Assembly: GCA_044892525.1 (NCBI GenBank) | Contig: CM097885.1 | Location: 22,940,001 to 23,004,000, forward strand | Reading direction: 5' to 3' | DNA: 64,000 nucleotides | Source: Schmidtea polychroa | Taxonomy: Eukaryota | Part shown: piece by piece, positions 25,746 to 64,000 of the stretch | Numbering within the stretch: position 1 is the first letter of the stretch | Layout: every line of letters starts with the position of its first letter | Position numbers and translations under genes: made by a program | Notes under the pieces: generated by a model | What the model saw: only the letters and a program-made list of their open reading frames with translations | Database searches by the model: none | Told to the model about the DNA's origin: nothing

Positions 25746-26007
25746 GTAAATTAATTTATTAACAAAATATTTTTAAGAATCATCGTTTAAAATTTTTAGT
25801 GAAATTGTAATGTAAAATTTATTTTTTATTCTTTAAATTTTGTCTGAATAATTGACAAATTTGAACTAATTGCTTTTAATTAAAAATAATTCTTATTTTT
25901 TGCGAATGTAATCATCTGTAATTTAAATTGTCATTATTTTTGATAGTACATATCATTGTTTAAATATTGATCAATCATTGTAATTTTTATTAAATTTGTA
26001 AATAAGA

Positions 26008-32806: not shown

Positions 32807-35800
32807 ATGTCACAAAAAAATAAAATACATCCTATTGAAACGGAAGAGGAATTAGAAACAAGAATCATTTCACCTAATTCAATGATAATGCAAGTTTTTG
32901 ATAGCAGTTCGTCCGTTAAAAAGGAAGAAAAAGAAGAACATAAAAAAATGAATTATGATTCAAATCGACAGTTAGAAAAGATATTGAAATCAATAGAAAA
33001 CTGGGACCTCAAAGAATTTCTATCTATTTATGAATTAGAAATATTATCTGTCAACAGTGTTTTTGATTGCAAATTAAAGGAAACGGTAAATATTTATTAA
33101 AATATTTTCAAATATTAATACTACTGTCATTCATAAGTTGAAGCTGTCTTCGAATTTCCCTGGCTACCTTGACAATTGCAACTTGATTCACTATGCCACC
33201 TTGTACAGAGCAACTAAAATTGTAAGGTTGCTTCTAAGTTCACAATTTAACTACCCCATTGATACAGTGACCCAGGTAAGTCTTATTTTCTCTAAAGAAA
33301 TTGTGATAAATGCTTTTATTTAAAGGGTATTTATTTTCATTTGTGTTTTTTAAAATAAATTTATAACAGAAAATGTTTTCTACCTAACTAATTATATTAA
33401 AATAGTGTACATCATCCCTTCCGTTCCTTTTCCAAGTTTCTTCAACTCTCCTTGCAATAATTATTAACAAAATATTCTGGAGATTTGAAAGCAGAAACAA
33501 TCCTAACTCCAGTCAACTATATTTCGTTTGCTTTCGTTTTTTTTCTAAAATGGTTTTGAAAAGAATTTCAATATATCTCAGTTAAAACTGATGTATTTGC
33601 ATATTGTCATCCATACATCTTTTTCACAATATATATCGATAGCATCACCATCGTTGTCAGGTTACATACATATACAATATTGATAATTTATAAACTAATT
33701 ATTAAATCTCTAAGTTTTAAATTATAAATACTAATTTTAAATAATTATTTTCAAAAAGATAATCAAAAATAATTTTTAAAACATTAATTTAAAATTATTA
33801 AATTTTAAATAAATATTTTAAAACACTCTTTTTTATTTTTAAAAATTCTTTAAAAAAATAAACATCAACATACAAAACTTAATTAAAAACATTCAACACA
33901 CACGTATTCACTGCATTCTGCACATTGATTTTCGGATTAAAAGTTCTTATCAATAATGCTTCACATATCACATGCTCAAAACAATTATCAAAATTTTTTG
34001 ATAAGATTTTAAAATCAGACATTCCTAATTTTCTCGTACAACCTTTATTATGATCCTTAATATTGGTCACTCTTTCGGTCGACAAGGTTTTTGCACTCGA
34101 ATAATATATTTTTTGCATTAATTTATAGCTATATTTTCTATCTTTTAGTGTAATATTTTTTTGTCTGACTTTATTACATGGTTTATTAATTTTATTTTAT
34201 TGTTAATTATAAGTGTATCTACTAATTGCCAATTCTGAACATGATTGACCGTATTAATAATTTACATGCAGTGGCCCTCTTTTCAACAAAAAAGAACCAA
34301 TATTAAATACAATTGTCATATTTTACAAATTATTTTTTTATCTTTATTTCGATTTCGACTATTGTTCAATACTTTTCATTTATTCATATTTAAACACAAA
34401 TTTCCGACACTGCCTTTCTGAAGTGTCAGATATAATACAATATTATTTCAAATGTTATTCATTATAGCAACGGTTTGCAACACCGGTAACCAAGTTAATA
34501 GACGAAACTTCAATAAAAAACTTCGATAGTTCATCCGAAAATACCGATAATTTTGTAGTTCTGTTTTGAAAAAGGCACAAATACAATTAAATACCAAAAA
34601 ATGAATGTAGAATGAATGTCGTTGATCTTTTTGATGAGGAATTTTTGCACATCCTTTATCAAATAGAAACTTGTCAATATCATGTACCTTATATATTTCT
34701 TTGATTTATTGTCATACAAATATTAATATGAAAATTATTGAATTATAAAAAAATCAAAGGTGAAATAAAAAGATAAATATGATAATTACAATAAAATTAT
34801 ACTCCCTCTGTCCAAAAATGATAGTCCAGTTTGACTTTAAATCGTAATTTCTTTTATACTTAACAGTGATACTTAAAATGCAGTTTTGTTATTTGTTCAA
34901 TCAATAAAATAAAATTATTTAATGTGTTTTTATTGTAAAAGGTTTTACAAAACCGTTCAATTTTTTATATTCTCTATTGACAATCATTTTTTGAAAAAGG
35001 CTAAAATGAAAATAGACTATCATTTTTGGACAGAGGGAGTATATCATATCATACAGAATTTAATACCGAGTCTGATGAAATAGAAAGTAATTTGAAAACT
35101 AGTTTTAAATGCATGTTAAAAGGAAAATATTGGAAATAAATAATTTTTTTGAATGTGTTGTTGTCATATTGTAGAAAATCTGATAACAATTCGAATTAAA
35201 TATAAATACTTTGAAAAATATTGAAAAACTTGAAGTGCTAAAAGTTTTAAAATAAAAAATAAATACTTTTTAATAAATATTATATAATAACTTGTAGAAA
35301 ATTTTATGGCGAGTCTAATGTTGCTAAACATGATAGTAGGTAGATAGTAGCGTACGGCAGCAATAGGGGGGGTACCCCCCCCCTGCTGCCGTAATTTTTT
35401 TGCTGCAACTTTTGATTACGCAATTTTTCAGACTATAGTGAGGGGGTCTCGATGGTCCTGGGATTTTCAATACAAAAAAAATTTTCAATACAAAAACGAT
35501 GGTCCTGGGATTTTCAATACAAAAAAAATTTTTCAATACAAAAATCCGACTACCACTAAAAAATCATGGAATTTTCACACTATAGTGAGGTGAGTCTCCT
35601 TGGACCTGAGAAATAGGTGGTCTACACTAAAAAAAACGTGGTAATTTAAGGTCTCAGGATATTTTCTATACAAAAAGGCGGTCTCACTAAAAAAGCATGG
35701 TAATTTAAGGTCTCAGGATATTTTCAATACAAATAGGTGGTCTACACTAAAAAAAGCCAAGGATTTTTCACACTATAGTGAGGTGGGTCTCCTTGGACCT

Positions 35801-38800
35801 GAGAAATAGGTGGTCTACACTAAAAAAAACGTGGTAATTTAAGGTCTCAGAATATTTTCTATACAAAAAGGCGGTCTCACTAAAAAAGCATGGTAATTTA
35901 AGGTCTCAGGATATTTTCAATACAAATAGGTGGTCTACACTAAAAAAAGCCAAGGATTTTTCACACTATAGTGAGGTGGGTCTCCTTGGACCTGAGAAAA
36001 AGGTGTTCTACACTAAAAACGTGGTAAATTTTTCAATTAAAGTAAATAATGGCTCAAATTTTTGAATTACAGTAAATTATGGTCCAAAAAATTAAATTAA
36101 AGTAAATTATGGTCCTAAAAATTGAATTAAAGTAAATTATGGTTCTAAAAAATTAAATTACAGTAAATTATGGCTCAAATTTTTGAATTACAGTAAATTA
36201 TGGGTCTAAAAACTGAATTACAGTAAATAATGGTTCTAAAAATTAAATTAAAAGTAAATTATGGTTCTAAATTTTTCAAATACAGTAAATTATGGTTCTA
36301 AAAAAATTAAATTACAGTAAATTAAGGTCCAAATTTTTCAAATACAGTAAATTATGGTCCAAAAATTTAAATTAAAGTAAATTATGGCCAAAGTTTTTGA
36401 ATTACAGTAAATTAAGGTTCTAAATTTTAAATTAAAGTAAATTAAGGTTCTAAAAAATTAAAATAAAGTAAATTAAGGTCCAAATTTTAAATTAAGTAAT
36501 CAATGGTAATAATTTTTAAATAAGTAAATTAAAGTAAATTAAAGTAATAATTTTTAAATAAGTAAATTAAAGTAAGATTTTAAAATTTATTTACAAAAAG
36601 TTGAAGGTGTTTGAGAATTGAAATTTTTTAATGAAAATTTTTATGAAATAATTTTTTAAGTAAATTTTAATAGAAATTTTAATGAAATATTTTTCAATGG
36701 TAATTTTTAATGGAAATTTTTATGGAATATTTTTCAAAGACAAATTTTAATAATAATTCAACAACAAACCAACAACTTAGTACCAACAACCAGTAACTTA
36801 CGAACATGTATTAACAACCAGATACCTACAACTAGTTACTAACAACCAGTTACCTGATACCAATTACCTACCAAGTACTTACAACCAACATCAACCAGAT
36901 ACCTACAACTAGTTACTAACAACCAATTACCTGCTACCAAGTACTTACAACTAGATACCACGTACTAAATAACTCTCAAACAACCAAGTACCTACAACAA
37001 ATTACCAGATACCAAGTACCTACAACTAGTTACTAACAACTAGTTACCTGATACTAAGTACCTACAACCACCTAACAAGTACTAACAACCAAAAACAAGC
37101 AACCAACCAGGTACCAGATACCACCTACTAAGTACCTACAACCTACAACTAGATACTAACAACCAGTTACCTAATACCAAATACTTACAACTAGTTACCA
37201 AGTACCTACAACCACCTACCCATTAACTAGCTACCAAGTACTAACAACTAGGTCTCAAACAACTAAATACTAACAACCAGTTACTAACTACTAAGCATTA
37301 ATTACCTACAACTAGTTACTAACAACTAGATACCAAGTACTTACAACCAACATCAACCAGGTACTAAGCATCATCAACTAACTACTAAGTACCTACAACC
37401 TACAACTAGATACTAACAACCAGTTACCTGATACCAAATACTTACAACTAGTTACCAAGTACCTACAACCACCTACCCATTAACTAGCTACCAAGTACTA
37501 ACAACTAGGTCTCAAACAACTAAATACTAACAACCAGTTACCAACTACTAAGCATTAATTACCTACAACTAGTTACTAACAACTAGATACCAAGTACTAA
37601 CAACCAACATCAACCAGGTACTAAGCATCATCAACTAACTACTAAGTACCTACAACCTACAACTAGATACTAACAACCAGTTACCTGATACCAAATACTT
37701 ACAACTAGTTACCAAGTACCTACAACCACCTACCCATTAACTAGCTACCAAGTACTAACAACTAGGTCTCAAACAACTAAATACTAACAACCAGTTACCA
37801 ACTACTAAGCATTAATTACCTACAACTAGTTACTAACAACTAGATACCAAGTACTTACAACCAACATCAACCAGGTACTAAGCATCATCAACTAACTACT
37901 AAGTACCTACAACCTACAACTAGTTACTAACAACCAGTTACCTGATACCAAATACTTACAACTAGTTACTAACAACCAACCAACTAGGTACTAGATACCA
38001 AGTACTTACAACCAACATCAACCAGGTACTAAGCATCATCAACTAACTACTAAGTACCTACAACCTACAACTAGATACTAACAACCAGTTACCTGATACC
38101 AAATACTTACAACTAGATACCAAGTACTATCAACCAAAAACAACCAACCAACTAGGTACTAGATACCAAGCACTCACAACCAACATCAACCAGGTACTAA
38201 GCATTATCAACCAACTAAATACTAAGTACTAACAACCAACCAACCAGTTACCTGATACCAAGTACTTACAACTAGTTACTAACAACCAGATACCTACAAC
38301 TAGTTACTAACAACCAGTTACCTGCTACTAAGTACATACAACCAACTAGCTACCACCTACCAAGTACCAACAACCACCTACCCATTAACTAGCTACTAAG
38401 TACTAACAACTAACTACCACCTACCAAGTACATACAACCAACATCAACCAGGTACTAAGTATTATCAACCAAGTACTAACAACGAAGTAACTTACCTAGT
38501 ACTAAGCACTGTCAACTAGATACCAAACACTTACAACCAGATTACCACATGAAATTATTGGTTAAATATGAAAATAAGGGTTATAATTAGTTGTTTAGTA
38601 AATTATGGTGTAAAATTAAGTAATAAAGGATAAATAGGCAAATTAAGGATAAGTAAATTAAAGTTAAAAATTTTAAATAAGTAAATTAAGGTTCAAAATT
38701 TTAAATTAAAGGAAACAATGGTTTAAATTTTAAATTAAAGCTAAATGAGTAAATTAAAGTAATAATTTTTAAATAAGTAATGTAATAAGTAAATTAAACT

Positions 38801-38920
38801 AAGATTTTTAAATTTATTAACAAAAAATAGAAGGTGTTTGAGAATTGAAATTTTTTAATGAAAATTTTTATGAAATATTTTTTAAGTTAATTTTTAATGG
38901 AAATTTTAATGGAATAATAA

Positions 38921-38963
<43 letters not shown>

Positions 38964-41900
38964 TCAACAGTTACCAACAATCGGTTACTAAATATTTTTA
39001 ACTAGGTGCTAACAAATACTTACAACATGATACCACGTACTAACTAACTCTCAAACAACCAGATACTTACAACTAACTACTAAATATTCTTCACTGTATT
39101 TTATGAAATGCTTTTAAATTAATTTTTTATCTATCTACAAAAATATATTTAATTACAATCATTAGAAAAACCTTTTCAAATTTAACAAAAATGTTGATTT
39201 TCATCAAAAAACCACAACTCATCACCACGTGGAATTCAAAATAATTACAATGAAAGACTAATGAATTCTAATTTACAAAACATTCTTCTTTTAAATGATA
39301 ACTACTGACTTATTATTGCAATGTAAAAATCGCATTCAATAAATACTTATTGTTGATCAGTTTTATTATATATACTCTGACTTTATCCGACAGGATGTTT
39401 TGACCCCCTAAGGGTACAGGTCGTAAGGGTACTAGTCGTAAGGGTATTGGTAACACTCAACCACAACCTACCCATTAACTAGTTACTAAGTACTATCAAC
39501 AAGCTATCAACCAGATACCAACTACTAACAACCACCATCAAAACCCATCGAGAAATTAACAAATATCAACCTACAACTATATAACAACAATCAATAAACA
39601 ACACTGTACCAACTACCAAATACAAGATACCAACAACTTAGTACCAACAATCAACTAACAACACATAAAAATAATAGCAATTAAATACAAAATACTCTTC
39701 ATCACATACACTATCTTCTTATCAAAATCTAAAAAGTCAACCAACTACTTACAACCAACAACTATGTACTGACAAATTGATCTTTAAAAGAAAATACTCT
39801 TCACTTGAAAAATTAGATGGAAAATTAATTGAACTCAAGGCATCAATAACTAGGTAAAAATTGATTAAATAATTGTAAAAATTTAAATTATTCGAAATAA
39901 ATATCATAAAAAATTAATTAATGGACAAGAAAGAATTCTAATCATTAATCATCCAGTAAATTAAAAAAAATACTGATCATTCAAGTTGAATCAACTAAGA
40001 TAATAAATTAATAAGATAAGATCTAGTAGATAATTGATTTAGATTGAATAAATTAATTGAAATAAAATTAATTTTAATTATTTTTTTAAATGTACTCAAA
40101 ATGATTGACTGATTGCTCAAAATATTCAAAAAAAAACAGTATGAATTCATTACCATTATCAAAGTCAGCAATCTACAATAATAATATATATCATTAAATT
40201 CCAAAAGAGACTAGATAACTAATGATAACAAACCAGTAAATTCATTTAAATGACAATAATTGGTATATCCTAGTGAATTCTCCAATAAAATCATCTAAAA
40301 AGCATCAAATTTCCCTGAAATAACTATATCTTTTAAGATTAGTATCTTATCGATAAGTACTTGTTAAAGATCATATATTCACCTCAAACTAACAAGATTC
40401 CTTAAAATCCCTTAAATGACTATATTTCTACCCTTAATTCATATTATTACAAATATCATCTAAAAAGCATCAAATTTCCCTGAAATAACTCTATCTTTAA
40501 AGATTAGTATTTTATCAATAAATATCCTTAAAAGGTTATATATTTACCTCACACTAATAAGATTGCTTAAACTCTCCTTTAAATGACTATAATTCTAACT
40601 TTAAATCCTATTATCATACATATTTCACTATTGATAAAACCAGTTATAATTAAATTTTTGTTAATCACTGTAAATTTTTGTAAATCACTGTACTTGAAAT
40701 TTAAAATAAATATAACTGACTAGGTCCCATTGAAAGATTAAATTTATCCATTCAATAAAATATATTTCTTCAAATGATCATTTTTACCAATATTCAACCG
40801 ATTTAATTACTAATTAAAATCAAGATTTCCTCCAATAAAGATCAATTTTATTTAGTCAATGTTTTAAGTCCATATTTCTCAACTTTTGTCGTTGTCCGTC
40901 TAAATAAAGACAAAAATAATTCAAAGTTGATATCAATCCCATTTATCTGTAAAGTTTTCATCGTCAAAACCAAGTAAATCGATCATTATCCTTACTTAAT
41001 AGAACATTGTTCTAAAATATAAATCTAAATTAATATACAATGAATTAATCACAACCTAATAAAACGATATAATTATTATTGATACATAACTGACTAATTG
41101 ACATTTCCCTTAAAACAATGATATTTTACCAACATCACCATTAAAAAAATCATATATTCCCATCTTAACCCATGTCTCATTAAATTTAACCGACTATATT
41201 CCCATCTTAACCCATCCTTCATTAAATTCAATCGACTATATCTCCCTTACAATGATATATTCCCACCTTATCTGATCTCTCATTAAATCTAACCGACTAT
41301 ATCCCTTTAAAAATCATATATTCCCACCTTATCCGATCTCTCATTAAATCTCACCGACAATATCCCATCTTATCCGATCTCTCAGCAAATATTTCTACCC
41401 TTTTAAACATCTATCCGATTATATCCCTTATTTTCCCTAAAGATTTCACCCACTTGAGCCCTTTAATATATATCAATCCTCTTAAAATCCTCAGAGAACT
41501 TCAAAAATATGACTTTTAATTAATTGCTATAGGAACCAGACAAATAATAAGAGCCCCCTAAAAGATCAAAATTCACTAAATTTTCTACAAATATATACCA
41601 TCAAATACTGGAGATGATATATATTGATTGATCATAATTCTTCATCGATTCAGCCAATCATTTTCAAGCGCTATCAGCAAACTAAATTTCAGTATATTCT
41701 ACAATCATTTTCAAGTAAATTTAAATTCCTTGTTAAAGTTAACTAGTTTCTTAGCTCATGTTTTTTAAAGTTCATCAATGTGTAAATATTCTTAGAAAAT
41801 TATTGAAAAAATTATTTAGTGAAATATATTACAAACTTATCATTAAAAATTTATTCTATCACTTGAAATTAATTTTTATTTAAAAACTATTCAATAAAAT

Positions 41901-44900
41901 ACCACTAATTATCAAGAAATTAATTAAATTTATCAATTAAATTTATCACCATTAAAACTTTTAATCAGTCAACATGAAATTCTTAGAAAATTGTTCAATA
42001 TCCTCATAAAAATTTATCCTATCACTTGATTATTGTACAAACTCTAATTATTAACCTCATTAAAAATAAATTTTTATTTAAAATTATCAAGAAATTAATG
42101 AAATTTATCTTAGAATTATCATTAAATTATTAAAAATTCACGAAAATGATAGATATCCACAAAAATAATAGAAAATTACAAAAATGATGGAAATTCACAA
42201 TAATGATAGAAAATTACAAAAATAATAGAAAATTACAAAAATAATGGAAATTCACAAAAACGATAAAAATTCACAAAAATGATAGAAATTTACTTGAATA
42301 TTTACTAAAACCATCAACTCTAAAAATTATCAATGAATGCCTTAAACAACAAATTTGCCTAAATAATCATTCAAATAAAAGCATTAAATGATCAGTACCC
42401 TTGTGATATGTTGAATGTGAGTAGTACCCTTGTGAGCAATACCCATAGGGGGACAGAATATTTTGTCGGATAAACTCAGAGTATATATTAATTAACTCAT
42501 TCTTCATTGAATCAGTAAAATTATCATAAATTTCGATAAAAATTCTAAAGTGGTAAGCAATGAAAAGAGAAATATTCTTTAAACTTTGATAAAATTAACA
42601 ATGAAGGTGGTAAGAATCTTCATTAAAATGAGGAAATTACTCGATGATAAATTCAAATGGGTGAAAATAATTGGTAGAATAATTCATTAATAGATCATTG
42701 AATGGGCATAGATAAGAAGAAGCTTGATAAGAATGGAAGTATATTAATTTATTTAAAATTATTTCATAAAATTCATAAATTTAATAAAAAAAAAACTTTT
42801 AAAACAAATATTTGTCTGGAATAATTAATCAAAATTGGTGGAATATAATTGATTAAATATCGAGGGTGGGGAATATAAGTGAATAATTAATGGAAAATCG
42901 GGAATCGGGGGTAATATAGGGATTAAATAGTAGAGAATAATAGTGAATATAAGTGAGGAGGATATATAATTTAAGCTAGTTTATTACATAACAAGCCGTG
43001 ACTAGTTTATTACATAACAAGCCGCAACTAATTTATTACATAACAAGCTGTGAATGGTTTTTGAATAAGAAATATGGAATAGGTCTTATTTTTTTAAATT
43101 TTTGACTAAAATAAATTCTAAAATAATAACTAATTAACACTAAAATGTTTTAATTTANNNNNNNNNNNNNNNNNNNNNNNNNNNNNNNNNNNNNNNNNNN
43201 NNNNNNNNNNNNNNNNNNNNNNNNNNNNNNNNNNNNNNNNNNNNNNNNNNNNNNNNNNNNNNNNNNNNNNNNNNNNNNNNNNNNNNNNNNNNNNNNNNNN
43301 NNNNNNNNNNNNNNNNNNNNNNNNNNNNNNNNTAAGTTGAATATTCAAATATATATCTTAGAAAATACAATCAAAATTAAATTTTAAAAATATAAATTTT
43401 ATAAGTTTTTCAAATTCTCGAATAATGTAAATAATAATTTAATTTTTACCGGGTATAGACTTAAACTTATTGACGGAATTATGTAATAGAAATAAAAAGT
43501 TACTTAGGTTATTTTTTTTTCAAAATTATGACTAAGTCCTTTAATATTGTAATAATAGCTATTTATTAATAAATTTATTATTTTACGTTAAATATTTCAA
43601 AAACAATTATCATATTATTATATTACCCTTTTTAATCAAAATAAGATAACTATTCAAATAGATGATTTTTATAAATTACAATAAAAATTAAATACTTTTA
43701 CACTAAATTTAAAAATATAAATTTTATAAGTAAATGTAAATAAGAAATTAGTGTATTATCAGTTATATACTTTTTAAACTTATTGATTAGATATTAAAAG
43801 TTACTCTTTTTTTCATAAGGTCTTTTAATATTGTATTCTATTTATTATTAAATTTACTATTTTACACTAAAATATTTAGAAAACAATCATCATAATATTA
43901 AATATGAAACTTCAATCAAAATTAGCTAATACTCGAATATATATCTTATAAAATACAATCAAAATTAAATACTTCACAAATTTTAAGTAAAGTTTTTTAA
44001 ATTCTCAAATAAATGTTAACAAGATATTAATTTAATAATCATTATATACTTTTTAAACTTATTATTGGAATAAAACAATAGAATGATATTGAAAATATAT
44101 ACAATTTTAAAATATAATTAAAATTAAATTACATACTTTAAAAATTTAGTAAAATGTTGGTAAAATACCATTCACAGCTTGTTATGTAATAAATTAGTTA
44201 CGGCTTGTTATGTAATAAACTAGTCACGGCTTGTTATGTAATAAACTAGCTTAAATTATATATCCTCCTCACTTATATTCACTATTATTCTCTACTATTT
44301 AATCCCTATATTACCCCCGATTCCCGATTTTCCATTAATTATTCACTTATATTCCCCACCCTCGATATTTAATCAATTATATTCCACCAATTTTGATTAA
44401 TTATTCCTCACAAATATTTGTTTTTTTATTAAATTTATGAATTTTATGAAATAATTTTAAATAAATTAATATACTTCCATTCTTATCAAGCTTCTTCTTA
44501 TCTATGCCCATTCAATGATCCATTAATGAATTATTCTACCAATTATTTTCACCCATTTGAATTTATCATCGAGTAATTTCCTCATTTTAATGAAGATTCT
44601 TACCACCTTCATTGTTAATTTTATCAAAGTTTAAAGAATATTTCTCTTTTCATTGCTTACCACTTTAGAATTTTTATCGAAATTTATGATAATTTTACTG
44701 ATTCAATGAAGAATGAGTTAATTAATATATACTCTGAGTTTATCCGACAAAATATTCTGTCCCCCTATGGGTATTGCTCACAAGGGTACTACTCACATTC
44801 AACATGTCGCAAGGGTACTTTTAATACTTTTATTTGAATGGTTATTTAGGCAAATTTGTTGTTTAAGGTATTGATAATTTTTAGAGTTGATGGTTTTATT

Positions 44901-47900: not shown

Positions 47901-48418
47901 CAATACCCCTACGACTAGTACCTTTACGACCAGTACCCTTACGACCAGTACCCTTACGACCTGTACCCTTAGGGGGTCAAAACATCCTGTCGGATAAACT
48001 CAGAGTATATATAATAAAACTGATCAACAATAAGTATTTATTGAATGCGATTTTTACTTTGCAATAATAAGTCAGTAGTTATCATTTAAAAGAAGAATGT
48101 TTTGTAAATTAGAATTCATTAGTCTTTCATTGTAATTATTTTGAATTCCACGTGGTGATGAGTTGTGGTTTTTTGATGAAAATCAACATTTTTGTTAAAT
48201 TTGAAAAGGTTTTTCTAATGATTGTAATTAAATATATTTTTGAAGATAGATAAAAAATTAATTTAAAAAGCATTTCATAAAATACAGTGAAGAATATTTA
48301 GTAGTTAGTTGTAAGTATCTGGTTGTTTGAGAGTTAGTTAGTACGTGGTATCTAGTTGTAAGTATTTGTTAGCACCTAGTTAAAAAATAATCAGTAACCG
48401 ATTATTGGTAACTGTTGA

Positions 48419-48457
<39 letters not shown>

Positions 48458-54400: not shown

Positions 54401-57400
54401 GTGAATTAAGGATTTTAAACAAATTTATTAATTTACATAGTTATTATATCCCACCTGATGATGACAGGAAATCGAAATATATCGTGAAAAAATGTTTGAT
54501 TGACGTTATCTTATAATTAAATCATTGCCGTGTTTGTTTAATTATTAATTTAAAAAGAGTTGCTTTATTTTCACTGTTATAAAAGTTGATAAAATTCAAT
54601 AAAATTAATTTTAATAATTTTGAAAATAGACAATTACTACACAACCTTTCTTTGGCTTTCAACTTGTTTGGGAAACAAGATTTTATCATCATTGCAAAAC
54701 TATTCTCCATTTTCAAATGTGATTTATTTAAGTCATTTAAAACTTTTCTCTCCTCTAACTTTATTGAAATTTATGAAATATTCCACTTCTTCCAGGGTTC
54801 AATCTATTTTTCGGTAATCACTATAAACCTGCATTTTCTATTTTTCTTCTTCAAATAAAGCATTGTATACTGCAATTATGAGATTATTTTAAGAATTCCA
54901 CAACACAAAAAAGGACGGGGAAAGCTATTCTCATTTCTTTATAACACAATTTAATATTTTTAATAGAAAATTTTACCAAATTTTCCTTACAAAACAGGAA
55001 GGAATAACGCCACTTCACATTTCTGCAGCCATTGGAGATTTCTATACTGCTCGAGAACTTCTAGCGCACGGAGCAAACAAAAATTTGCTGGATAAAGTAA
55101 TTTTTGTTTAATTTAAAATATTTATTACTTTATCATCATTTGATACGTTTCCCAAGTTTCTCACGTCATCAGTCCAGAGACTTTTGCAACCATTTTTACA
55201 TATCTGGGGTTCCAAGCATTTCTGATTCAACACAAGATTGAATCACAAGAACCGCAAATAATTTTTCATCTGTAAAGACAACAAATCTCAGTTCGTATTC
55301 GTATCAAGTCGTTCTTTGTACATTCTATTTAGTTGTCCTAGGTTTATATTTCAAATAAAATTTCCAATTTACTTCAATAAAAGATGAACAAATCTAAGTT
55401 GAGGTATTTTAAGATCCATAGCTCGACATTTTTTGTTATTTCGTATAGAAAATTAGTTTCCTCCATCCTAAGACAACTGAAATTGGCCGGGAAAATGAAG
55501 TATTTCCTATCAAGCAGTTGAGTATTATAAAATTTGAAGCCCTTTTTCTAAGAATTATAAGGCCCCTTAAAATTGCTTTCACATTATCATTTACAAATAA
55601 GCTTGCCAACTCTCCCGTTTTTGTTGAGAGTCTCCCGGAATCGGCTTTCGTCTCCCGTCTCCTAGTTAAATATGACCCGGGAGATGTAAATCTCCGTATT
55701 TCCGTTTTTACAATATTTTACAATTTTCCTAGAAAAAGTACAGTTTTTCAAGTTTTAATTTTTATTTGATTTCTCTAAAATCACCAAAGCTATTGGAGTC
55801 AGCCAGACGACAAGAAAAATACAATTTTAAAAACAAACAAAAATAGCAAGATTTGTAAACTGTACTATGTAATATGTAAAAATAATTGTTTTGTTTAAAT
55901 CTTTATGGTATTAGTCATCATATAGTTAAAATCACTAACATGTGTAAACCAAAAAAGTGAAAGAACACCTGTTATATTATTTCTTAAGCGTTATACTGTT
56001 CACAATTTTATAATCTCCCGGGTTCAAGGTTGTGGGAGTTGGCAACCTTATTTACAAAAATAAAAATCATTCAATTTATAAAACAAAAATTATATTTATG
56101 AAAATAAAAGAATATAACATTGTATTTATTAAATAACTTGACTATTAATCGGTAAATATATCGATGTGTTTTTATATCTTTACTGATTCATAGTCAAGCT
56201 TTTAATAAATACAATGTCAATTGAAAAGAAATCAGTGCTGAAAATTGATAAAAGTTCTTATAATAAAAGAATATAAATTTAATTAAAAATTAATTAAAAA
56301 AAATTTAATTCAATAAAAAATTATGAAAAAAAGTAAAAAATATTTGAAAATTTTGATTTGATTTTTAGATTTTATATACATACGTTCAACAAGTAGCCAG
56401 AATATGTGTTAAAGGAAACGAACAAAAACGGTATATTTTAACATAAGAACAATACGGTTATAAAGGGTTTATTTTTCAATCCCATTTTCACACTTTCTCC
56501 AGCGAATCAAAAGTTTCAAAAAGCATCTTTTATTTTTATTTATTTTATTCTGCTGGTACTCCTGTGCTAAACACAGTAAGCAAAATGGATAAGATGGTTC
56601 TTTTATCAAGTATTCAAATACAAAATAAGTCCAAAATAATAAAAAAATAAAAATCAGAAGACAAAGCTTTGCTCGGTATATAAATATTTGAATACTTTGC
56701 AGTGTATACTAATTCCATATTAAAACCAAATATCTTCATAAGGTTTTTGACTATAAAGCAATGTTTTTTTCGTTTAACATAAAATTTACACAGCATTTTT
56801 CAATTCAATAACACTTGTAACAAAGGCACTGTAGAAAATTCATGTTAAATCGAAAAAAAAGTAATGATTTCAATGAAGATAAATAAAATTCTAAATGAAA
56901 AACCACAGATCAAAGCTGAACAAGAAATAAATGATTTTATTAAAATGTAATATGAAAAAAGTAAAATTGTTATAAATTTATTTATATACTTCGATTGTTG
57001 TTTTAATGGTTGTGCAAATTGTCAAATTGTTACTTATCAAATTGTATTTGAATCTTATTTGTGAAAAATTACTGACTAGTTTGGCCATTTCTGCTACTTA
57101 TGAAAATTTTTAAATTTTTTTTGCAAATTTTATTATTCAAACATCTATTTAATTATAGACAGGCAGAACAGCTTTACACTATGCAGTATGTTCTAATATT
57201 GAGACTTGCATCATTCTTACAAGTGATGGGGACTATGATCTACAACTTCAAGATGAGGTGGGGCATCGTTTTAATTGTAAATGATAAATTACAGTTTCAC
57301 GATTAGAACGAAAAGTCACCACTCCAATACGGGAAAATGGAAAACATGCCATTTATTTTCGAGTATTTAGAAACATTAGATAAAAAGGTAATATTTATAT

Positions 57401-60400
57401 TTGAAGCAAACAAGTCTGACCACATACATTTAGACACATAACCTATGGATACCTCAGAATATTTGGCAATATGAATGTTATTCCATCATTCCAAGGTAAT
57501 AATTTTCTCAATTTTTATTTTAAAGTTTTGTCTATTAAAGAGAAATAAAAACTTAAAATATTACCAATCTGGAAAAACTTAAAAATTATTTATCAAATAA
57601 TTTGATAAATTTTTGTACACAAACCTCATTTTCCTGAAATATGTAAATAGTAGGCTCGCCCTTTTTTGATGCAGTTAAGGGGGGATCTACAGAAAATAAT
57701 GAAACAATTTTAACTATTTGAATTTAACAAGTAAAAATTAAGTGATTACACAATGAGTACACATTTTACATATTTTCAATTTATGCTATTTGGTTAAAAT
57801 ATAAAAATAAATATAATTTTGAATTAATTTTCTAGTAACAAGCGATTTTATTATTATTAATTTAGCTATTAACACATGTTAATATTCTAAGGTTTTTCTA
57901 TGATTTTTTTTGTATTTAATAATGTTTATATTTCTTTTAATAATATTAATTTTTCAATTAATAGTGTTTGTCATTTCATTTCATATACAATTAATTTATA
58001 ATTATAATACTAATGAATATTAAAATTATACTTATTAAATAATAATAAGTTGTTTTAATATTATTATTCTAAGTGAATCGAATTTAAACATGACTGAAAA
58101 TCTTATTACTGGTGATTACGCTCAATTCTAATTATGTAAAGTAATTATAATTTCATACTACTCCGTCTCATCTTCTGATAATTTTCATATAGCTTAAATT
58201 ACTTTCATTTCATTTTGTTGGAGTAATATATAAAGGGACAAAGTAAAACAGAAGTACATTAAAAATAAATAAAGACACCAAAATAAAAATTAATTAAAAA
58301 TTTATAAAAGTTAATATTAATCAGGGGAAATGCGTAAGATTGAACGCCAAATCACGAGACGAGTCCAAAGATAATAATACATATTTAGTGAAGGGTCCCT
58401 AGAGAAAGTTTTAACGAAATAACAAACTAATTAAAATTAATTAATCATCTCATGGAAAGCCTGAGGTAATGTAAAACCTGAATCATTGGGAAACCCGAAA
58501 TTTATAGAGAGCCGAGCAGTAAGGAAAGTAATATAACTGATTTTTAAATAAAGCCTTAATAGGTAAGCCGAATAATTACCTTTTTGAGGAAGAAATTAGA
58601 TCTGAATTTCGGGAATAATTGCCTAACAATAATTAAAATGTATTCGGGACTGAAATAAAGCTTGCCACCTGAAGGTCGAAGAGAAAAAAATGAAAAAAAA
58701 TATTTAAAGCGAATTAAAAATGAATCAAGCAGAACGAATTGAATGATACAAACTTTGAGTGTTAACAGTAAATTAACTTAATGTACCAGAAAAGGCGATC
58801 ATTCATTGAGCCATCTACCTTTACATTAATTAACTAAATTCTGACGAATTGTAAATTGGATTGAGAATCAATAAATTTTATTGTGTTTGGTCTTAGTTGT
58901 TTGATTTATAAAAGGGACTCGAGGAGTTAGAAACGAACCGGCTTTATTGATTGATAACCCAACACTTTGACAATATTTTCACAATTTTCTTTTATTAAAA
59001 TTAATTTCACGCTCACGTTTTATTTATTTGACCAATTTCGCGCATAGTCATCCAAAATATATTTCATTTTTAAACCGTGTAAACTATCTCTCAATTGTTC
59101 AACCAGTATTATTCTTTATCATAATATTGTTTATAACATCAAATAAATCCCAAATTTTCAAAATCTCTTTTATAATTTTGTGTAAGTTTAATTTTTCCGT
59201 TTTAATTTACATAAACGTTTTTCTTTTTTTTTAATTCAAAAAAAATTGTTTTCCTAATTATATAGTAATTATTATTTTATTTAATATTTTATTTACTTTA
59301 TTAATTTTTTCAACATTTAAAATCATCATACATTTTATTGTAAAATATCAGATTATAAAATGAACTGCTTATTTATAAAATCGATTAACTCCCCAAAAGA
59401 AAAAGTAGAGAAAATTGATATACACTGTTTTTAAAATTACTTTTAACATTTATATTCAAATATACATAATGTGGCACTTAGCCTATTTATCAAGGAAATT
59501 AATTTAAATATAAAAAGTTAAGTATCATTCAAGCGCTTCAGCATTTAAATTTAAAAACATTCAAAATTTGGGTTAATCATTTTGACCTCTGTCAATAGTT
59601 CAAATATCGATTCAAAATTATTAGGATTATTAGTTTTACATGACTATTTAAATTACTTTATTATTATTATTAAATTATTGATGGTTAATAATCTAATTTA
59701 GAAAGGACAATCTGGTTCAATGTGAATGTGGACAAAATGTTGCAGATCATTATTCAGTTTTCGAAAAATATGATTTCGTTGACACGGAAAATGTTGAAAA
59801 ACCTACCAATTTCTATGGTGAAATAGAATTTTCAGGTCTTTACAAAAGCAAACCAGTAAGATTTACATAGCAAAATTATGATACAAAAATTATGTAATAA
59901 AAAGCAAATAAAATAAAAATTATTAACAAAAATCACAATTAATGAATAAATATTATAATAATAATTGTAAAAATAGCTTTACAAACTCATATGTCGGAAA
60001 TAGTGCGTTTCTTATATAAGCAAAACTCAAAATTTTAGGACAGTTGATATAATTAATGTCATTATATATTAATACAATATTGTAATATAATCTAATATAA
60101 TATTAATATAATATTTATATGATGTCGTAATATATTAATATAATATCGTAAATATATAATATTAATGTAATATCGTTATATATAATATTAATATAATGTT
60201 ATAAGATATTGACACATTTAGCAAAATTATGATGCAAAAGTTATGTAAAAATTCCCAAAAGTTGAAATCAAACAACATTTCAATAAATTTTTAACAAATT
60301 TGTGTTTATTAATATTAATGAATTCCTCAGTCGATAGTGATCAGGAACTTGAGAATGGAGATGACGGACAGTCATTCCAATGTATGTGGCATTGCACCCA

Positions 60401-60671
60401 TGACATAAATATTCTTAAGCAAGATTTGAAATCCACTAATAAACACGAAGTTATAGAAACAGGAATTAGAAACCACCTTCTAACGTTGGATAGATAACTT
60501 CTTGTTCAAAATATTTACGCAAACTGTATAACATTCCAAATACAAAAATGTAAACCTAAACACAAAATTGTGTTTGCTGATATAACGCAAATCCTTCAGT
60601 CGACAGTTATTCAGAACTTGAGAACGGAGATGACGGGCAGTCATTCTAATGTATATGGCATTGCATCCATG

Positions 60672-60713
<42 letters not shown>

Positions 60714-63700
60714 GTTATTGATATTAGTTCCACCAAATAACATTACTGACATTGAAAGAGGTTCTCTAGTAATATTGATCACAAGTCCCCATAAAGACAA
60801 TTTATTTAATTAGACAGTCGTTAGAATACTTTGACCTAGTTCCAGTTGTAAAATATTTGGCCAAGGAAAAACATCAATTTGTCTTCAGCTGCACCAGATA
60901 TAACATATTTTCTATGTTAACAAGTAAATGTATTTATCAAAAATGGTAAAAATGGCCATATTGGATTATGCAATACTCTTTTTTGAAGTTTCAGTAAAAC
61001 GAAATTTTATAAATTTAGAAAATTAGTTTTAAGGTAATATATGAAAGATATAAAATATATATTATCCATCTATTAACTGAGATGGGATATTTTTATTATT
61101 TGCCCATTCACATATTTAGTTGTAGATTTAATGATGCTTGATTCAAACAATGGGTAATTGTTTACAAGCCATTATTTGTGTATGAACATTGTTTATATAG
61201 ATAATAAACGGAAATAAATACGACATACGGATGCATAATAAATTTTATTATTATACGAATTAGTTTTTATTTCAAAATTTACGATAAAAATAATTTTCTA
61301 TTTTCACAGTTTATTTATTTTTATATTATTTCTAGAAGGTTAAAATATGCATCTTTTAAAGGTTTTCTATAATATATATTTAATAAAACAAAAAAATATT
61401 TTTAATTTATAAAGTAACTACATTATTTGTTCAAATTAACAAAATATTGATTAAATTTCACTTTAATAAAACAAAAATCTATCACTTTAATGAAATAAAC
61501 AATTTAAGAAAATGGTGTTGATTTTAGTTTTAATAGATAATAATCAAAATCACTTGAAACAGGCAGTGCTGAATACTCGTGAATATAAAAAAACATCGAT
61601 ATGTTTAATGGATCATAGTCAAAAATTTTCTTATAATCCAATGTTAATAGATATTGTTTAAATATCTGAAATTTCATAATTCAAAATATTTTGAATTTGC
61701 ATTATAGAAATTATTTTTGAGCATTAATTTACTTAAAGAACTACATTAATTTAAATTAAAAAATACATTAATCAATTTAAGAAAACACATTTGACAAAAA
61801 AAGACCATTATTTAATATTATTTTGAAATTAAAAAAAATCACAGATCATTATTTATAAAATTACCCTTGTCTTAGTAAAGCTTTTTTAGCTTTCGAAGAT
61901 CTTCCTCTCTTGCGCTTGGTTCCAATATCGACATTTTTTGCCTCTGGTGGTGGTTTGAAATACTTTAATCTGATCGCCGTACCAACCACATGTTTTCAAA
62001 TTTAGTGCTTTAGAAATGTATATATCGATACATGAATTCATGATCAAAGTTCTCCAAGAAGCTCATAAATATCCAACTTCAGCATTCACTCCCGAAGAAC
62101 ACTACAATCTTCTCAGTTGTGATACTATAGTTGCTGGTATATAATCTAATGAAATCCAGCCGCGACTTCTAGAATTAGGAGATAACACCTTCCACTTTAC
62201 ATAAAAGATCGGCTCTTCTGAGGAATTGTCAATGAAAGATTCAACAACAAAGCACTAATTGCAAAATCACTCAATCTATGACAAGCCACGAACTTCAATA
62301 TTTAAAACTAGGTGAATTATGTGCGGTAAGCATAAGGCATCAAACTACCCAGCAAAGGATTCTACACATAAAAATGCGGAAAAAGCAGACATTGATATTA
62401 AATTGCTTATCAAAGAAAATCGTTTTAACTCGAAGAACGGACACTCATACAATTATATCAGAGAACTTTATTAAACTTGAACCAATAGAAGCTGAAAACT
62501 CAATAATCGAAGCTTTTCTAGAAGGTCACACAGTCAAAGCTCTGATAGATACGGAGTTAGACTAATAGTTTGTATCAAAAAAATTTTTAAAAATGCACAT
62601 CCTAGAGTTTAATCATTTAGTAGTCGAATCAATACTATTTACTAACAATTCAAAACCCCTAACTTCAGGATCTTATAAGAGGACAATTCGCTTACAAGAT
62701 ATTGCTTACAGCCGCTCACTCCAAATATCCAAAAACCTTATTAAACAACTATTATTCGGAATGGACTTACTCAAGCGACAATCTATTTAGAATTTGGAGG
62801 CAAAGCACAGCCAATCACTCTTTTATTCGCTTCAAAAACAATGGAATTAAAACCGATTGTGATGCTTATTTGTCTCTCATTAACAAACAACGTCCTGATT
62901 TATCAAGAAATTAACAACCTATTAAAAACTACATAATACAAGAAAATCGCAGCCCTTGGGGAGCTCAGTGTTTTTTAATAAATAGAAACTTTAAACAACG
63001 TCGAGTGATTAACTGTTTGACTAAAGTTTTCAAAGGTTTTAAATAAAATTTCCCTTTCTTATCTTCAAGCAGCCTGTGAATCTGTGGGTTAGTATATTAC
63101 ATATAATATCTTGCATTTAACTAGTCTAACACATAACATAAGCTTTATCAGTAATTATTGGTTATGCTTAAGAATTTATTGATCTATTATCATTTTACAT
63201 AAAATAAAGAAAAGTAATTAATTTCTAATTGAATTAAGATTTCATATAACATATATAAATATATATACTATGAATCAATAAAGATATTGATGTTTTTTCT
63301 ATATTCACAAATTTTCGGCATTTGTATCAAAATCACTTGAAAAACGCAGTGCCAAAAATTCGTGAATATCAAAATAAGCATCGATATCTTTNNNNNNNNN
63401 NNNNNNNNNNNNNNNNNNNNNNNNNNNNNNNNNNNNNNNNNNNNNNNNNNNNNNNNNNNNNNNNNNNNNNNNNNNNNNNNNNNNNNNNNNNNNNNNNNNN
63501 NNNNNNNNNNNNNNNNNNNNNNNNNNNNNNNNNNNNNNNNNNNNNNNNNNNNNNNNNNNNNNNNNNNNNNNNNNNNCAATAAATACTAAATTTGAAACAA
63601 CCGTCTCACTGTTGATAGACCAGTGGAAAATTGTAAAGCCTAGCCTGATAATAAGCATTTATGGCAGTGACTTTGAGGGTCATGCGATTAAAGATATTTT

Positions 63701-63953
63701 GAGAAAAGGTATTCTAAAATCGGCTGGTAATAGAGGTATTCTATAAAATTGAACAAAAGAGAAATAATAATTTAATTCAGAAACATTTGTATGGATAATT
63801 ACTGACGGAATATTTACAAATTTAATTGAAGTAATCGGGAAAGCGATCCGTGATTTTACTGATGCATACGGTGAAAATCAAATGTATGCTTTTGCGATTA
63901 TGCCCTGGAGTATTCACAACGAAACGAACTATCTTTGTTCGAGAGATTATCAA
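32807..63953 (+). CDS. Ankyrin-repeat-bearing TRPM-family cation channel, 5' part. Exons 32807-33085, 33138-33275, 54998-55096, 57159-57257, 57307-57387, 57434-57495, 59702-59855, (<63577)-63735, 63781-63953; continues past the window
   Basis: Phases are compatible at every GT-AG junction that can be checked; the exon 8 acceptor lies in an N gap. Ankyrin repeats: [11 protein letters not shown]|[15 protein letters not shown]|[12 protein letters not shown]|NEKSPLQYG. These lead into TRPM MHR1/SLOG motifs [65 protein letters not shown]. Confidence 0.85.
33870..34700 (-). pseudogene. Penelope-like retroelement 3' remnant (GIY-YIG endonuclease C-terminus)
   Basis: ORF 33879-34118 IKDHNKGC...SDFKILS...[18 protein letters not shown]...LNVFN* matches the PLE endonuclease tail; the upstream RT thumb region is decayed. 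Confidence 0.6.
34802..35039. mobile_element. 238-bp Tc1/mariner (Stowaway-like) MITE
   Basis: Perfect 25-bp TIR CTCCCTCTGTCCAAAAATGATAGTC; TA on both sides. Confidence 0.95.
35430..36020. repeat. Outer arm module: ~194-bp tandem units made of ~55-bp subunits (mirrored, shorter, at ~50570-50960)
   Basis: CACTATAGTGAGGTG(A/G)GTCTCCTTGGACCTGAG recurs at ~35578, ~35771 and ~35965. Confidence 0.85.
36030..36540. repeat. ~31-bp AT-rich tandem repeat module (mirrored at ~50010-50570)
   Basis: About 16 copies of AAATTAAATTA(C/A)AGTAAATTATGGT(C/T)C(T)AA. Confidence 0.9.
36760..38540. repeat. C/A-rich complex satellite with a 257-bp higher-order repeat (mirrored and shorter at ~48740-49660)
   Basis: Shuffled CAACCAGTTAC, TAACAACTAG and ATACCAAGTAC motifs; the anchor AGTACCTACAACCTACAAC recurs at 37131, 37388, 37645 and 37902. 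Confidence 0.9.
39375..42481. mobile_element. Nested ~3.1 kb non-coding TIR element with TA flanks (left-arm copy)
   Basis: CTCTGACTTTATCCGACA... / ...TGTCGGATAAACTCAGAG, each bounded by TATA. Subterminal GTCGTAAGGGTAC repeats; internal ~170, ~45 and ~19-bp tandem repeats. Confidence 0.8.
43158..43331. other. Assembly gap in the foldback loop
   Basis: Run of N. Confidence 1.
44732..48005. mobile_element. Nested ~3.3 kb TIR element, mirrored right-arm copy
   Basis: Perfect 18-bp TIR CTCTGAGTTTATCCGACA at 44732 and inverted ending at 48005; TA flanks. Confidence 0.8.
51715..52150. repeat. C-poor G/T/A degenerate tandem repeat
   Basis: Repeated AAATTTGGGAAATTTTTGAGTTGGGAAAATTTGGG variants. 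Confidence 0.85.
54330..54502. repeat. 173-bp near-perfect hairpin (MITE-like), ~78-bp arms, ~18-nt loop
   Basis: CAGTCAAACATT...TCATCATCAGGTGGGATATAATAACTATGTGAATTAA followed by its reverse complement TTAATTTACATAGTTATTATATCCCACCTGATGATGA...AATGTTTGATTG. Confidence 0.85.
55598..56050. mobile_element. 453-bp hAT MITE
   Basis: TIRs TAAGCTTGCCAACT and AGTTGGCAACCTTA; perfect 8-bp TSD tttacaaa. Confidence 0.9.
60342..60712. repeat. ~65-bp direct repeat pair (~60342 and ~60612) followed by a (CA)n(TA)n microsatellite
   Basis: GAACTTGAGAA(T/C)GGAGATGACGG(A/G)CAGTCATTC..ATGTAT.TGGCATTGCA.CCATGACA occurs twice. Confidence 0.8.
61860..62050 (-). pseudogene. MULE SWIM-domain transposase C-terminal remnant
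   Basis: [49 protein letters not shown] (SWIM tail plus AT-hook-like KRKRGR). Confidence 0.6.
62460..63010 (+). pseudogene. Ty3/gypsy protease-RT remnant
   Basis: [18 protein letters not shown]...LLFGMDLL (retropepsin), then [11 protein letters not shown] (start of RT); stops and frameshifts. Confidence 0.7.
63392..63576. other. Assembly gap hiding the start of a TRPM exon
   Basis: Run of N immediately before SINTKFETT. Confidence 0.95.
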
Positions 63954-64000
63954 GTTCCATAATCATAAGTTATTTGAAAGAACATTTATTCTCAATTAGG

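What the first reader, a model, noticed from the sequence alone, without database searches (positions are those of the whole stretch)
32807..63953. TRPM-type channel with about 4 N-terminal ankyrin repeats
Seen: ankyrin exons run in frame into TRPM MHR1/SLOG sequence ([43 protein letters not shown]). The ankyrin-to-SLOG junction crosses only 46-49 bp introns (57257-57495), so the fusion does not depend on the long introns. Known: canonical TRPM channels such as human TRPM1-8 lack ankyrin arrays, which typify TRPA, TRPN, TRPC and TRPV. Inference: an atypical chimeric TRP architecture. Some invertebrate TRPM/TRPS-like proteins may already have it; I cannot check this.
Basis: partly seen in the sequence, partly recalled or inferred. 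Interest (0 to 1): 0.75.

Follow-up and report, generated by a model that had tools for sequence, protein, structure and literature searches.

The report
Planarian TRPM channel gene with ankyrin head
The window holds the first nine exons of a flatworm (planarian) TRPM-type gene in which ankyrin-repeat exons are spliced in frame onto the normal TRPM start; a published transcript of a close relative (Smed-TRPM-a1, a thermosensory-neuron channel) shows the same join, so it is real, but it is an undescribed feature of a known gene family, not a new kind of channel.

Summary
All five quoted motifs are at the stated places on the + strand. The ankyrin exons join the TRPM N-terminal exons through 49- and 46-bp GT..AG introns, in frame. 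I built a 9-exon model (32807-63953); the gene runs off the 3' end, so no channel domain is in the window.

Pfam supports two ankyrin repeats firmly (exons 3 and 4). Exon 2 is weak and exon 5 gets no support, so "about 4" is generous. Exons 8-9 match the TRPM SLOG domain.

The best SLOG matches are all flatworm proteins. A riboprobe sequence of Schmidtea mediterranea Smed-TRPM-a1, printed in a paper supplement and taken from a transcript contig, runs intron-free through the homologues of exons 1-7. By my by-eye estimate it is about 85-91% identical to the window, and every junction is where I placed it. So the ankyrin-TRPM join exists in mRNA of a close homologue, and exons 2 and 3 (either side of gap 1) are neighbours there.

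Gap 2 hides the acceptor and about 6 codons of exon 8; I did not fill it.

The literature I could search says TRPMs lack N-terminal ankyrin repeats. The only exception it gives is the flatworm channel TRPM_MCLZ, which lacks SLOG. Verdict: a real, new variant of a known kind, of moderate interest.

The parts
32807..33085 (+). Exon 1: ATG plus 93 codons, Lys/Glu/Ser-rich leader with no domain hit
   Evidence: The ORF opens right after a stop and the donor is GTAAAT. Its last ~60 nt have a homologue at the 5' end of the Smed-TRPM-a1 probe, in the same frame. The 5' extent and the start codon are not verified.
33138..33275 (+). Exon 2: 46 codons, degenerate ankyrin repeat (N-terminal cap?)
   Evidence: A 52-bp GT..AG intron lies before it. 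Ank_3 15.2 bits, E 0.033, below the cut-off; z 2.9 against a remembered ANK consensus. It is joined to exon 1 and exon 3 in the a1 transcript; the junction 13-mer was found.
33276..54997 (+). Intron 2, 21.7 kb: two inverted copies of a ~7 kb repeat (35383-43062 and 44162-51007) around a 1.1 kb spacer that holds the N run 43158-43332
   Evidence: The inner ~4 kb of the arms are 88-96% identical and the outer tandem-repeat parts 74-82%. There is no coding homology beside the gap. The a1 transcript joins exon 2 directly to exon 3.
54998..55096 (+). Exon 3: 99 nt, one complete ankyrin repeat
   Evidence: Pfam Ank 29.2 bits, E 9.6e-07; phase 0-0; an exact 23-mer is shared with the a1 probe.
57159..57257 (+). 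Exon 4: 99 nt, one ankyrin repeat
   Evidence: Pfam Ank 21.1 bits, equal to the gathering score; phase 0-0; GT..AG.
57307..57387 (+). Exon 5: 27 codons, possible truncated C-terminal ankyrin cap
   Evidence: No Pfam hit and z 1.3, so the ankyrin reading rests only on position and an S-P-L start. It is flanked by the 49- and 46-bp introns.
57434..57495 (+). Exon 6: start of the TRPM-specific N-terminus (W-I-x-x-N-I-x-x-x-E-C)
   Evidence: It aligns with the same motif in Dreissena, Octopus and Gigantopelta TRPMs. Local BLASTP of exons 6-7 against fetched TRPMs gives 30-36% identity. An exact 21-mer is shared with the a1 probe.
59702..59855 (+). Exon 7: Cys-rich pre-SLOG region (C-x-C-G; T-N-x-x-G-E-I-E-F-x-G)
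   Evidence: Scanned alone it has no Pfam or PDB hit.
63392..63576 (.). N run that hides the acceptor and about 6 codons of exon 8
   Evidence: Left unfilled.
63579..63735 (+). Exon 8, readable part: SLOG (MHR1) strand-helix with P-S-L-I-I-S-I-Y-G
   Evidence: LSDAT_euk 24.7 bits, profile positions 9-59. The donor at 63735 is confirmed by P0001, a public 114-aa fragment 93.6% identical across exons 8+9.
63781..63953 (+). Exon 9: SLOG continued (W-I-I-T-D-G; R-D-F-T-D-A-Y-G)
   Evidence: LSDAT_euk 22.4 bits, profile positions 64-116. Best PDB match is human TRPM2. In the 1.84-billion-protein search every match that could be named is a flatworm protein, apart from two Octopus multi-SLOG proteins and one unrelated repeat protein.

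Best explanation
This is the 5' third of a planarian TRPM gene of the TRPM-a1 / DjTRPMa type. Its protein starts with a ~230-residue extension: a charged leader, then a short ankyrin stack with two clear repeats flanked by two degenerate ones, each repeat encoded by its own phase-0 exon. That extension is fused directly to the normal TRPM N-terminus (Cys-rich motif, then the SLOG/MHR1-2 domain).

Shown: the exon chain, the reading frame, the domain hits, and the same exon chain in a transcript of a close homologue.

Inferred from the homologue and from published work: the rest of the protein is a six-TM TRPM channel with a C-terminal NUDIX-like domain, expressed in peripheral thermosensory neurons.

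Inferred mechanism: in solved TRPM structures the N-terminus and MHR1/2 sit at the outer rim of the cytosolic ring. The ankyrin stack would therefore project from each of the four arms. There it could act as a docking or tethering module for a partner protein or the cytoskeleton, or as a regulator of the ligand-binding MHR1/2 arm, with the pore gated as in TRPM2-like channels. The one-repeat-per-exon layout suggests the ankyrin block was added by exon shuffling or duplication within flatworms.
For: The gene model has 7 visible GT..AG introns, consistent phases and stops just past every donor. Pfam finds Ank in exons 3 and 4 and LSDAT_euk in exons 8 and 9, and the best PDB match of exon 9 is TRPM2. 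Exons 6-7 align to the TRPM N-terminal motif.

The Smed-TRPM-a1 probe, taken from transcript contig dd_Smed_v6_17857_0_1 or dd_Smes_v1_33400_1_1, is colinear with exons 1-7 without introns. That probe consists largely of the ankyrin-coding region, and it stained head-tip and peripheral cells, matching DjTRPMa thermosensory neurons. The same contig number is used for the paper's NUDIX alignment.

Flatworm affinity: the named best hits are Hymenolepis, Echinococcus, Protopolystoma, Trichobilharzia, Fasciolopsis and Macrostomum, which share an R-D-[YF]-x-D-A-Y-G motif with exon 9.
Against: The transcript evidence comes from a homologue roughly 9-15% different in nucleotides (by-eye estimate), not from this locus, and the PDF text of the probe has dropped letters, so its frame cannot be checked end to end. 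Exons 2 and 5 are not statistically ankyrin. No structure prediction of the spliced N-terminus was possible. The exon 7-8 junction is hidden in a gap. No channel, TRP-helix or NUDIX sequence is in the window. The proposed role of the ankyrin stack is inference only.
Confidence: 0.78

Rival explanations
1. There are two transcription units. An upstream ankyrin gene ends just after exon 4 or 5, and the TRPM protein starts at the Met inside exon 5, for instance after trans-splicing at the exon 5 acceptor. The fusion would then exist only in the gene model.
For: Reading through the exon 4 donor gives a stop after 8 codons. Exon 5 contains in-frame Met codons. From general knowledge, not tested here: flatworms use spliced-leader trans-splicing.
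Against: The homologous Smed-TRPM-a1 transcript stretch is continuous across exons 1 through 7. The gaps between exons are only 46-49 bp with canonical GT..AG and matching phase. A probe made mostly of the ankyrin-coding part gave the expression pattern expected of the TRPM.
Confidence: 0.07
2. The copy in the window is a partial duplicate, a pseudogene or a channel-less Ank-SLOG protein, not a working channel gene. The functional TRPM-a1 would lie elsewhere.
For: It differs by roughly 9-15% in nucleotides (by-eye estimate) from the published a1 transcript. S. mediterranea has at least 21 TRPM genes. Intron 2 is bloated by a 15.6-kb inverted repeat and intron 7 holds unexplained ORFs. SLOG proteins without a channel exist, such as the Octopus multi-SLOG proteins. 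The 3' part of the gene is outside the window.
Against: All nine exons are open, with intact splice sites and no frameshift. P0001, a second public sequence 93.6% identical in protein, keeps the same exon 8-9 splice. The divergence fits an orthologue in a sister species equally well.
Confidence: 0.12
3. Exons 1-2 are joined to exons 3-9 only by a scaffolding error across the N run at 43158-43332. The true gene would start at or near exon 3.
For: The two exon groups lie on either side of an assembly gap, inside a large inverted repeat, which is the kind of place where scaffolders go wrong.
Against: The a1 transcript joins the exon 2 homologue directly to the exon 3 homologue. Exon 2 ends and exon 3 begins at the same point of the ankyrin repeat unit, both in phase 0. 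The repeat arms are 74-96% identical, not ~100%, so they are real copies rather than one sequence assembled twice.
Confidence: 0.03

Closest known systems
Smed-TRPM-a1 (Schmidtea mediterranea) / DjTRPMa (Dugesia japonica)
   Same: It is an exon-by-exon homologue of exons 1-7, about 85-91% identical in nucleotides by my by-eye estimate, with identical junctions including ankyrin-to-TRPM. The paper reports a C-terminal NUDIX-like region and expression in head-tip and peripheral neurons. DjTRPMa is implicated in thermotaxis.
   Different: It is not the same sequence, so the window is either a paralogue or an orthologue in a related species. The papers I could read do not mention ankyrin repeats in these proteins ('ankyrin' occurs 0 times in the supplement). 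Inoue et al. 2014 was not available.
Canonical TRPM2-like channels (human and zebrafish TRPM2, Nematostella TRPM2, schistosome TRPM_PZQ, Smed-TRPM-f)
   Same: They share the Cys-rich N-terminal motif followed by the SLOG/MHR1-2 domain. The flatworm members share the R-D-[YF]-x-D-A-Y-G motif of exon 9.
   Different: Their TRPM motif starts about 45-100 residues from the N-terminus and no Ank Pfam domain precedes it (0 of 120 hits). Here about 230 residues, including ankyrin repeats, precede it.
Flatworm TRPM_MCLZ (meclonazepam target, Smp_333650)
   Same: It is a TRPM-clade channel of flatworms described as having N-terminal ankyrin(-like) repeats.
   Different: TRPM_MCLZ lacks the MHR1/2 (SLOG) domain and has 3 exons; the gene here has both ankyrin repeats and SLOG. 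I could not test whether the two ankyrin blocks are homologous, because I had no sequence of TRPM_MCLZ.
TRPA, TRPN, TRPC and TRPV channels
   Same: They have N-terminal ankyrin repeats on a TRP channel.
   Different: None has a SLOG domain or the TRPM Cys-rich motif between the repeats and the membrane part; here both are present.

Membership tests
TRPM (melastatin) channels | N-terminal SLOG / MHR1-2 domain (Pfam LSDAT_euk) | tested here: met
   Exons 8 and 9 cover profile positions 9-116 of 266, at 24.7 and 22.4 bits as single exons. TRPM2 is the best PDB match. The rest of the domain lies beyond the window.
TRPM (melastatin) channels | Cys-rich N-terminal motif before the SLOG (W-I-x-x-x-I-x-x-x-E-C ... 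C-x-C-G ... G-E-I-x-F) | tested here: met
   Exons 6-7 align column for column with mollusc TRPMs and give BLASTP matches at 30-36% identity.
TRPM (melastatin) channels | MHR3/4, six transmembrane helices, pore loop, TRP helix | not testable with these tools
   The gene leaves the window at 64000. These features are reported only for the homologue: BLASTP E = 0 to DjTRPMa and 5e-78 to human TRPM3.
TRPM (melastatin) channels | No N-terminal ankyrin repeats (stated as a family trait in the literature) | tested here: not met
   Ank hits in exons 3 and 4 lie upstream of, and in frame with, the TRPM motif. This departure is the finding itself.
Ankyrin-repeat domain | 33-residue repeats that reach the Pfam Ank threshold | tested here: met
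   Exon 3 scores 29.2 bits and exon 4 scores 21.1 bits, against a cut-off of 21.1.
Ankyrin-repeat domain | A stack of at least 3-4 consecutive repeats | tested here: inconclusive
   Exon 2 is below the cut-off (15 bits, z 2.9) and exon 5 has no support (z 1.3). The spliced protein has no reference, so it could not be folded.
Flatworm NUDIX-bearing TRPM subclade (TRPM_PZQ, Smed-TRPM-f, Smed-TRPM-a1) | C-terminal NUDT9-homology domain | not testable with these tools
   It lies outside the window. It is reported for Smed-TRPM-a1 and DjTRPMa.
Flatworm TRPM_MCLZ-like channels | N-terminal ankyrin-like repeats and absence of the SLOG domain | tested here: not met
   The repeats are present but so is SLOG; the published description is. 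Clade membership by the channel domain was not testable.
TRPS (ced-11-like) | Divergent TRP domain, and grouping with ced-11 in trees built on the channel domain | not testable with these tools
   There is no channel sequence in the window. The SLOG part matches TRPM2-type proteins best.

The most novel reading that the evidence does not exclude
Planarian TRPM-a-type channels carry a true ankyrin stack in front of an intact SLOG domain. They would then represent the architecture from which the SLOG-less, ankyrin-bearing flatworm drug target TRPM_MCLZ arose, with ankyrin gained once in flatworms by exon shuffling and SLOG lost later. In this reading the stack takes part in the temperature or ligand gating of the planarian thermosensor.
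Probability: 0.2. Interest if true: 0.7.

Novelty: new variant of a known kind. Interest (0 to 1): 0.5.

Why it matters
Reviews and surveys of TRP channels repeat that TRPM is the Group 1 TRP family without N-terminal ankyrin repeats. The two large TRPM phylogenies I could read did not sample Platyhelminthes. An ankyrin + SLOG + channel protein in planarians is a documented exception to that rule.

It belongs to a gene family with a behavioural phenotype (thermotaxis), and RNAi and in situ tools already exist for it. It also gives a candidate link between ordinary TRPMs and the ankyrin-bearing, SLOG-less TRPM_MCLZ of parasitic flatworms, which is a drug target. The question of what an ankyrin stack does on a TRPM arm can be tested directly by deletion in heterologous expression.

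It does not define a new channel class, and the gene family is already named.

Tried and rejected
1) Search of 1.84 billion representative proteins with exon 9. The only close hit was P0001, a 114-aa fragment; there was no full-length orthologue. P0001 is not on record in the contig index.

2) P0156, 69% identical to exon 8, sits on a 682-bp metagenome contig, so it gives no context.

3) Three word-indexed protein searches. The Octopus SLOG region returned 120 canonical TRPMs, none with Ank. A flatworm SLOG profile returned 120 fragments, none with Ank and none new for this subfamily. An exon 6+7 profile, made specific by local trials, returned no subfamily member. The public protein collection therefore does not hold this junction.

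4) Profiles headed by a long TRPM, meant to reach full-length proteins, were dropped. Local trials showed that generic TRPM2s would fill the 120 listed hits.

5) Exon 7 alone against PDB and Pfam gave nothing meaningful.

6) Rfam and tRNA scans of the window were empty.

7) The ankyrin-like open frame at 56447-56647 (with G-T-P-V-L) was rejected as an exon: it has no usable acceptor, and the a1 transcript joins exon 3 directly to exon 4.

8) Hydra and nematodes were considered as sources because of the 27% G+C and ~47-bp introns. They were dropped after the flatworm hits and the Schmidtea transcript match.

9) Inoue et al. 2014 (PMC6608440) is not held.

10) Pfam and AlphaFold on the spliced N-terminus were not run.
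Full report
**What is in the sequence**

The window is AT-rich (27.4% G+C) and has four N runs.

Reading the DNA around each open frame gave a nine-exon model:
- E1 32807-33085
- E2 33138-33275
- E3 54998-55096
- E4 57159-57257
- E5 57307-57387
- E6 57434-57495
- E7 59702-59855
- E8 (start hidden)-63735
- E9 63781-63953

Every visible intron is GT..AG. E1 to E6 all begin in phase 0. E6 ends in phase 2, and E7's first base completes that codon. Reading through any donor meets a stop within 2-17 codons. Four introns are 45-52 bp; the others are 2.1, 2.2, 3.7 and 21.7 kb. Exons are 32-42% G+C (E1 28%) against 15-33% in the introns. The gene runs off the 3' end of the window, so only about 420 N-terminal residues can be read.

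**Domains**

I scanned each exon on its own against Pfam.
- E3 is a clear ankyrin repeat (29.2 bits).
- E4 sits exactly at the Ank gathering score (21.1 bits).
- E2 is below it (15 bits).
- E5 has no hit.

The honest count is two firm repeats flanked by two degenerate ones. That is what the end repeats of an ankyrin stack usually look like, but it is not shown here.

E3 and E4 are each exactly 99 nt, phase 0-0. E2 ends and E5 begins at the same point of the repeat unit, so the layout is one repeat per exon.

E8 and E9 match 'SLOG in TRPM' (LSDAT_euk), profile positions 9-116 of 266. E9's best solved-structure match is human TRPM2. E6 and E7 carry the Cys-rich TRPM N-terminal motif and align column by column with mollusc TRPMs. 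In canonical TRPMs this motif starts 45-100 residues from the N-terminus. Here it starts near residue 235.

**The two gaps (tested first, as asked)**

Gap 1 (43158-43332) lies inside intron 2, far from any coding sequence, so the frame is not at stake there. What is at stake is whether E1-E2 and E3-E9 belong together.

Intron 2 consists of two inverted copies of a ~7 kb repeat, 35383-43062 and 44162-51007. The inner ~4 kb are 88-96% identical and the outer tandem-repeat parts 74-82%. They surround a 1.1 kb spacer that holds the gap. The arms are too different to be one sequence assembled twice. The transcript evidence below joins E2 to E3, which supports the scaffold join.

Gap 2 (63392-63576) ends two bases before the first readable codon of E8, and there is no AG in between. 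By alignment with canonical TRPMs, about six codons and the acceptor are hidden. The left flank shows no TRPM-like frame. The E7-E8 join therefore rests on homology only.

**Whose gene is it**

A search of 1.84 billion representative proteins with E9 found one close relative: P0001, a 114-aa fragment known only from UniParc. It is 93.6% identical over E8+E9 and spliced as in my model. Two Octopus multi-SLOG proteins and one unrelated repeat protein also reached significance.

Every other hit that could be named is a flatworm protein: Hymenolepis, Echinococcus, Protopolystoma, Trichobilharzia, Fasciolopsis and Macrostomum. These share an R-D-[YF]-x-D-A-Y-G motif with E9.

I then searched the supplement of Curry, Huynh and Rouhana 2025 (PMC12421698), which describes 21 TRPM genes in Schmidtea mediterranea, with short words from the window's exons. 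It returned exact matches in the Smed-TRPM-a1 riboprobe.

That ~600-nt stretch was copied from the reference transcript contig. It runs without introns through the homologues of the 3' end of E1, then E2, E3, E4, E5, E6 and most of E7. Every junction is where I had put it.

On that estimate identity is about 85-91%. So the window holds either a paralogue or the orthologue from a related species; I cannot tell which.

The paper gives further context on Smed-TRPM-a1:
- It names the gene as an orthologue of Dugesia japonica DjTRPMa (BLASTP E = 0).
- It finds a NUDIX-like C-terminus in the same contig.
- With this very probe, which is mostly ankyrin-coding, it stains head-tip and peripheral cells like the DjTRPMa thermosensory neurons.

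DjTRPMa is implicated in thermotaxis.

**What it most likely is and does**

It is the N-terminal part of a TRPM2-like, NUDIX-bearing planarian channel subunit whose normal TRPM start is preceded by a short ankyrin stack. The exon chain, frame and domains are shown. The channel body, the NUDIX tail and the neuronal expression are inferred from the homologue.

In solved TRPM structures MHR1/2 forms the outer cytosolic arm (established knowledge). I therefore infer that the stack projects from each arm as a docking or regulatory module. This is untested. The one-repeat-per-exon layout fits gain by exon shuffling.

**Rivals**

- Separate transcripts, with translation starting at a Met in E5. This is disfavoured by the continuous homologous transcript and the 46-49-bp in-frame introns.
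- A truncated, pseudogenic or channel-less copy. This cannot be excluded, because the 3' part is outside the window and channel-less SLOG proteins exist. However, all nine exons are intact.
- A scaffolding chimera for E1-E2. This is disfavoured by the E2|E3 join in the homologue.

**Comparison with what is known**

None of 120 full-length TRPMs and none of 120 SLOG fragments carries an Ank Pfam domain. A profile specific for E6+E7 found no subfamily member in 5.8 billion proteins.

[quoted passage not shown] A 2026 mollusc survey says the same. The two broad TRPM phylogenies did not sample Platyhelminthes.

The one described exception is the schistosome meclonazepam target TRPM_MCLZ. It has N-terminal ankyrin(-like) repeats but lacks SLOG. 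The planarian papers I could read do not mention ankyrin repeats in TRPM-a1 or DjTRPMa. Inoue et al. 2014 was not available.

**Verdict**

This is an undescribed architectural variant (Ank + SLOG) of a named, functionally studied gene family, so I file it as a new variant of a known kind, with moderate interest.

Noticed in passing
window 35383-43062 and 44162-51007: A 15.6-kb inverted repeat fills most of intron 2. The two ~7 kb arms are rich in tandem repeats (periods of about 30-280 bp). They are 88-96% identical in the inner 4 kb and 74-82% in the outer parts, around a 1.1 kb spacer that holds an N run. It may be a foldback-type element or a head-to-head pair of repeats; I did not identify the element.
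   Followed up: partly
window 10542-21076, minus strand: A VPS41 gene. Exons match the Vps41 beta-propeller and TPR-like regions and a C-terminal RING. Two N runs (16192-16418, 16484-16689) and a Tc1/mariner-type DDE_3 transposase remnant (13506-13874) lie in its introns.
   Followed up: partly
window 26002-27531, plus strand: Two long open frames (186 and 241 aa). The second has an OCRE domain (E 3e-13). This is probably a two-exon gene of unknown identity.
   Followed up: partly
window 23898-24470: A 30-bp minisatellite with 19 copies, 90% matches, in a locally G+C-richer stretch (35%). It gives long Pro/His/Cys- or Gly-rich open frames on both strands.
   Followed up: no
window 31937-32450, plus strand: Two 74-codon open frames lie 350-870 bp upstream of the start codon. 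From memory they look like hAT / GTF2IRD2-type transposase remnants. Pfam found nothing.
   Followed up: partly
window 62236-63043, plus strand (intron 7): Several 80-110-codon open frames lie next to gap 2. One contains an A-L-I-D-T-like motif reminiscent of a retroelement protease. Pfam found nothing in the two frames scanned.
   Followed up: partly
proteins P0002, P0019, P0020 (Octopus sinensis, O. bimaculoides): These proteins of 1272-1423 aa contain several tandem TRPM-type SLOG domains (three in P0002, the one I read) and have no ion-channel Pfam domain. They are a reminder that a TRPM-like SLOG does not by itself prove a channel.
   Followed up: no
The search for homologous proteins, alignment query: With a 201-aa first sequence the hits ranged from 49 to 349 aa. 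For alignment queries the length window therefore seems to run from 0.55 x the shortest row to 1.75 x the longest row.
   Followed up: no
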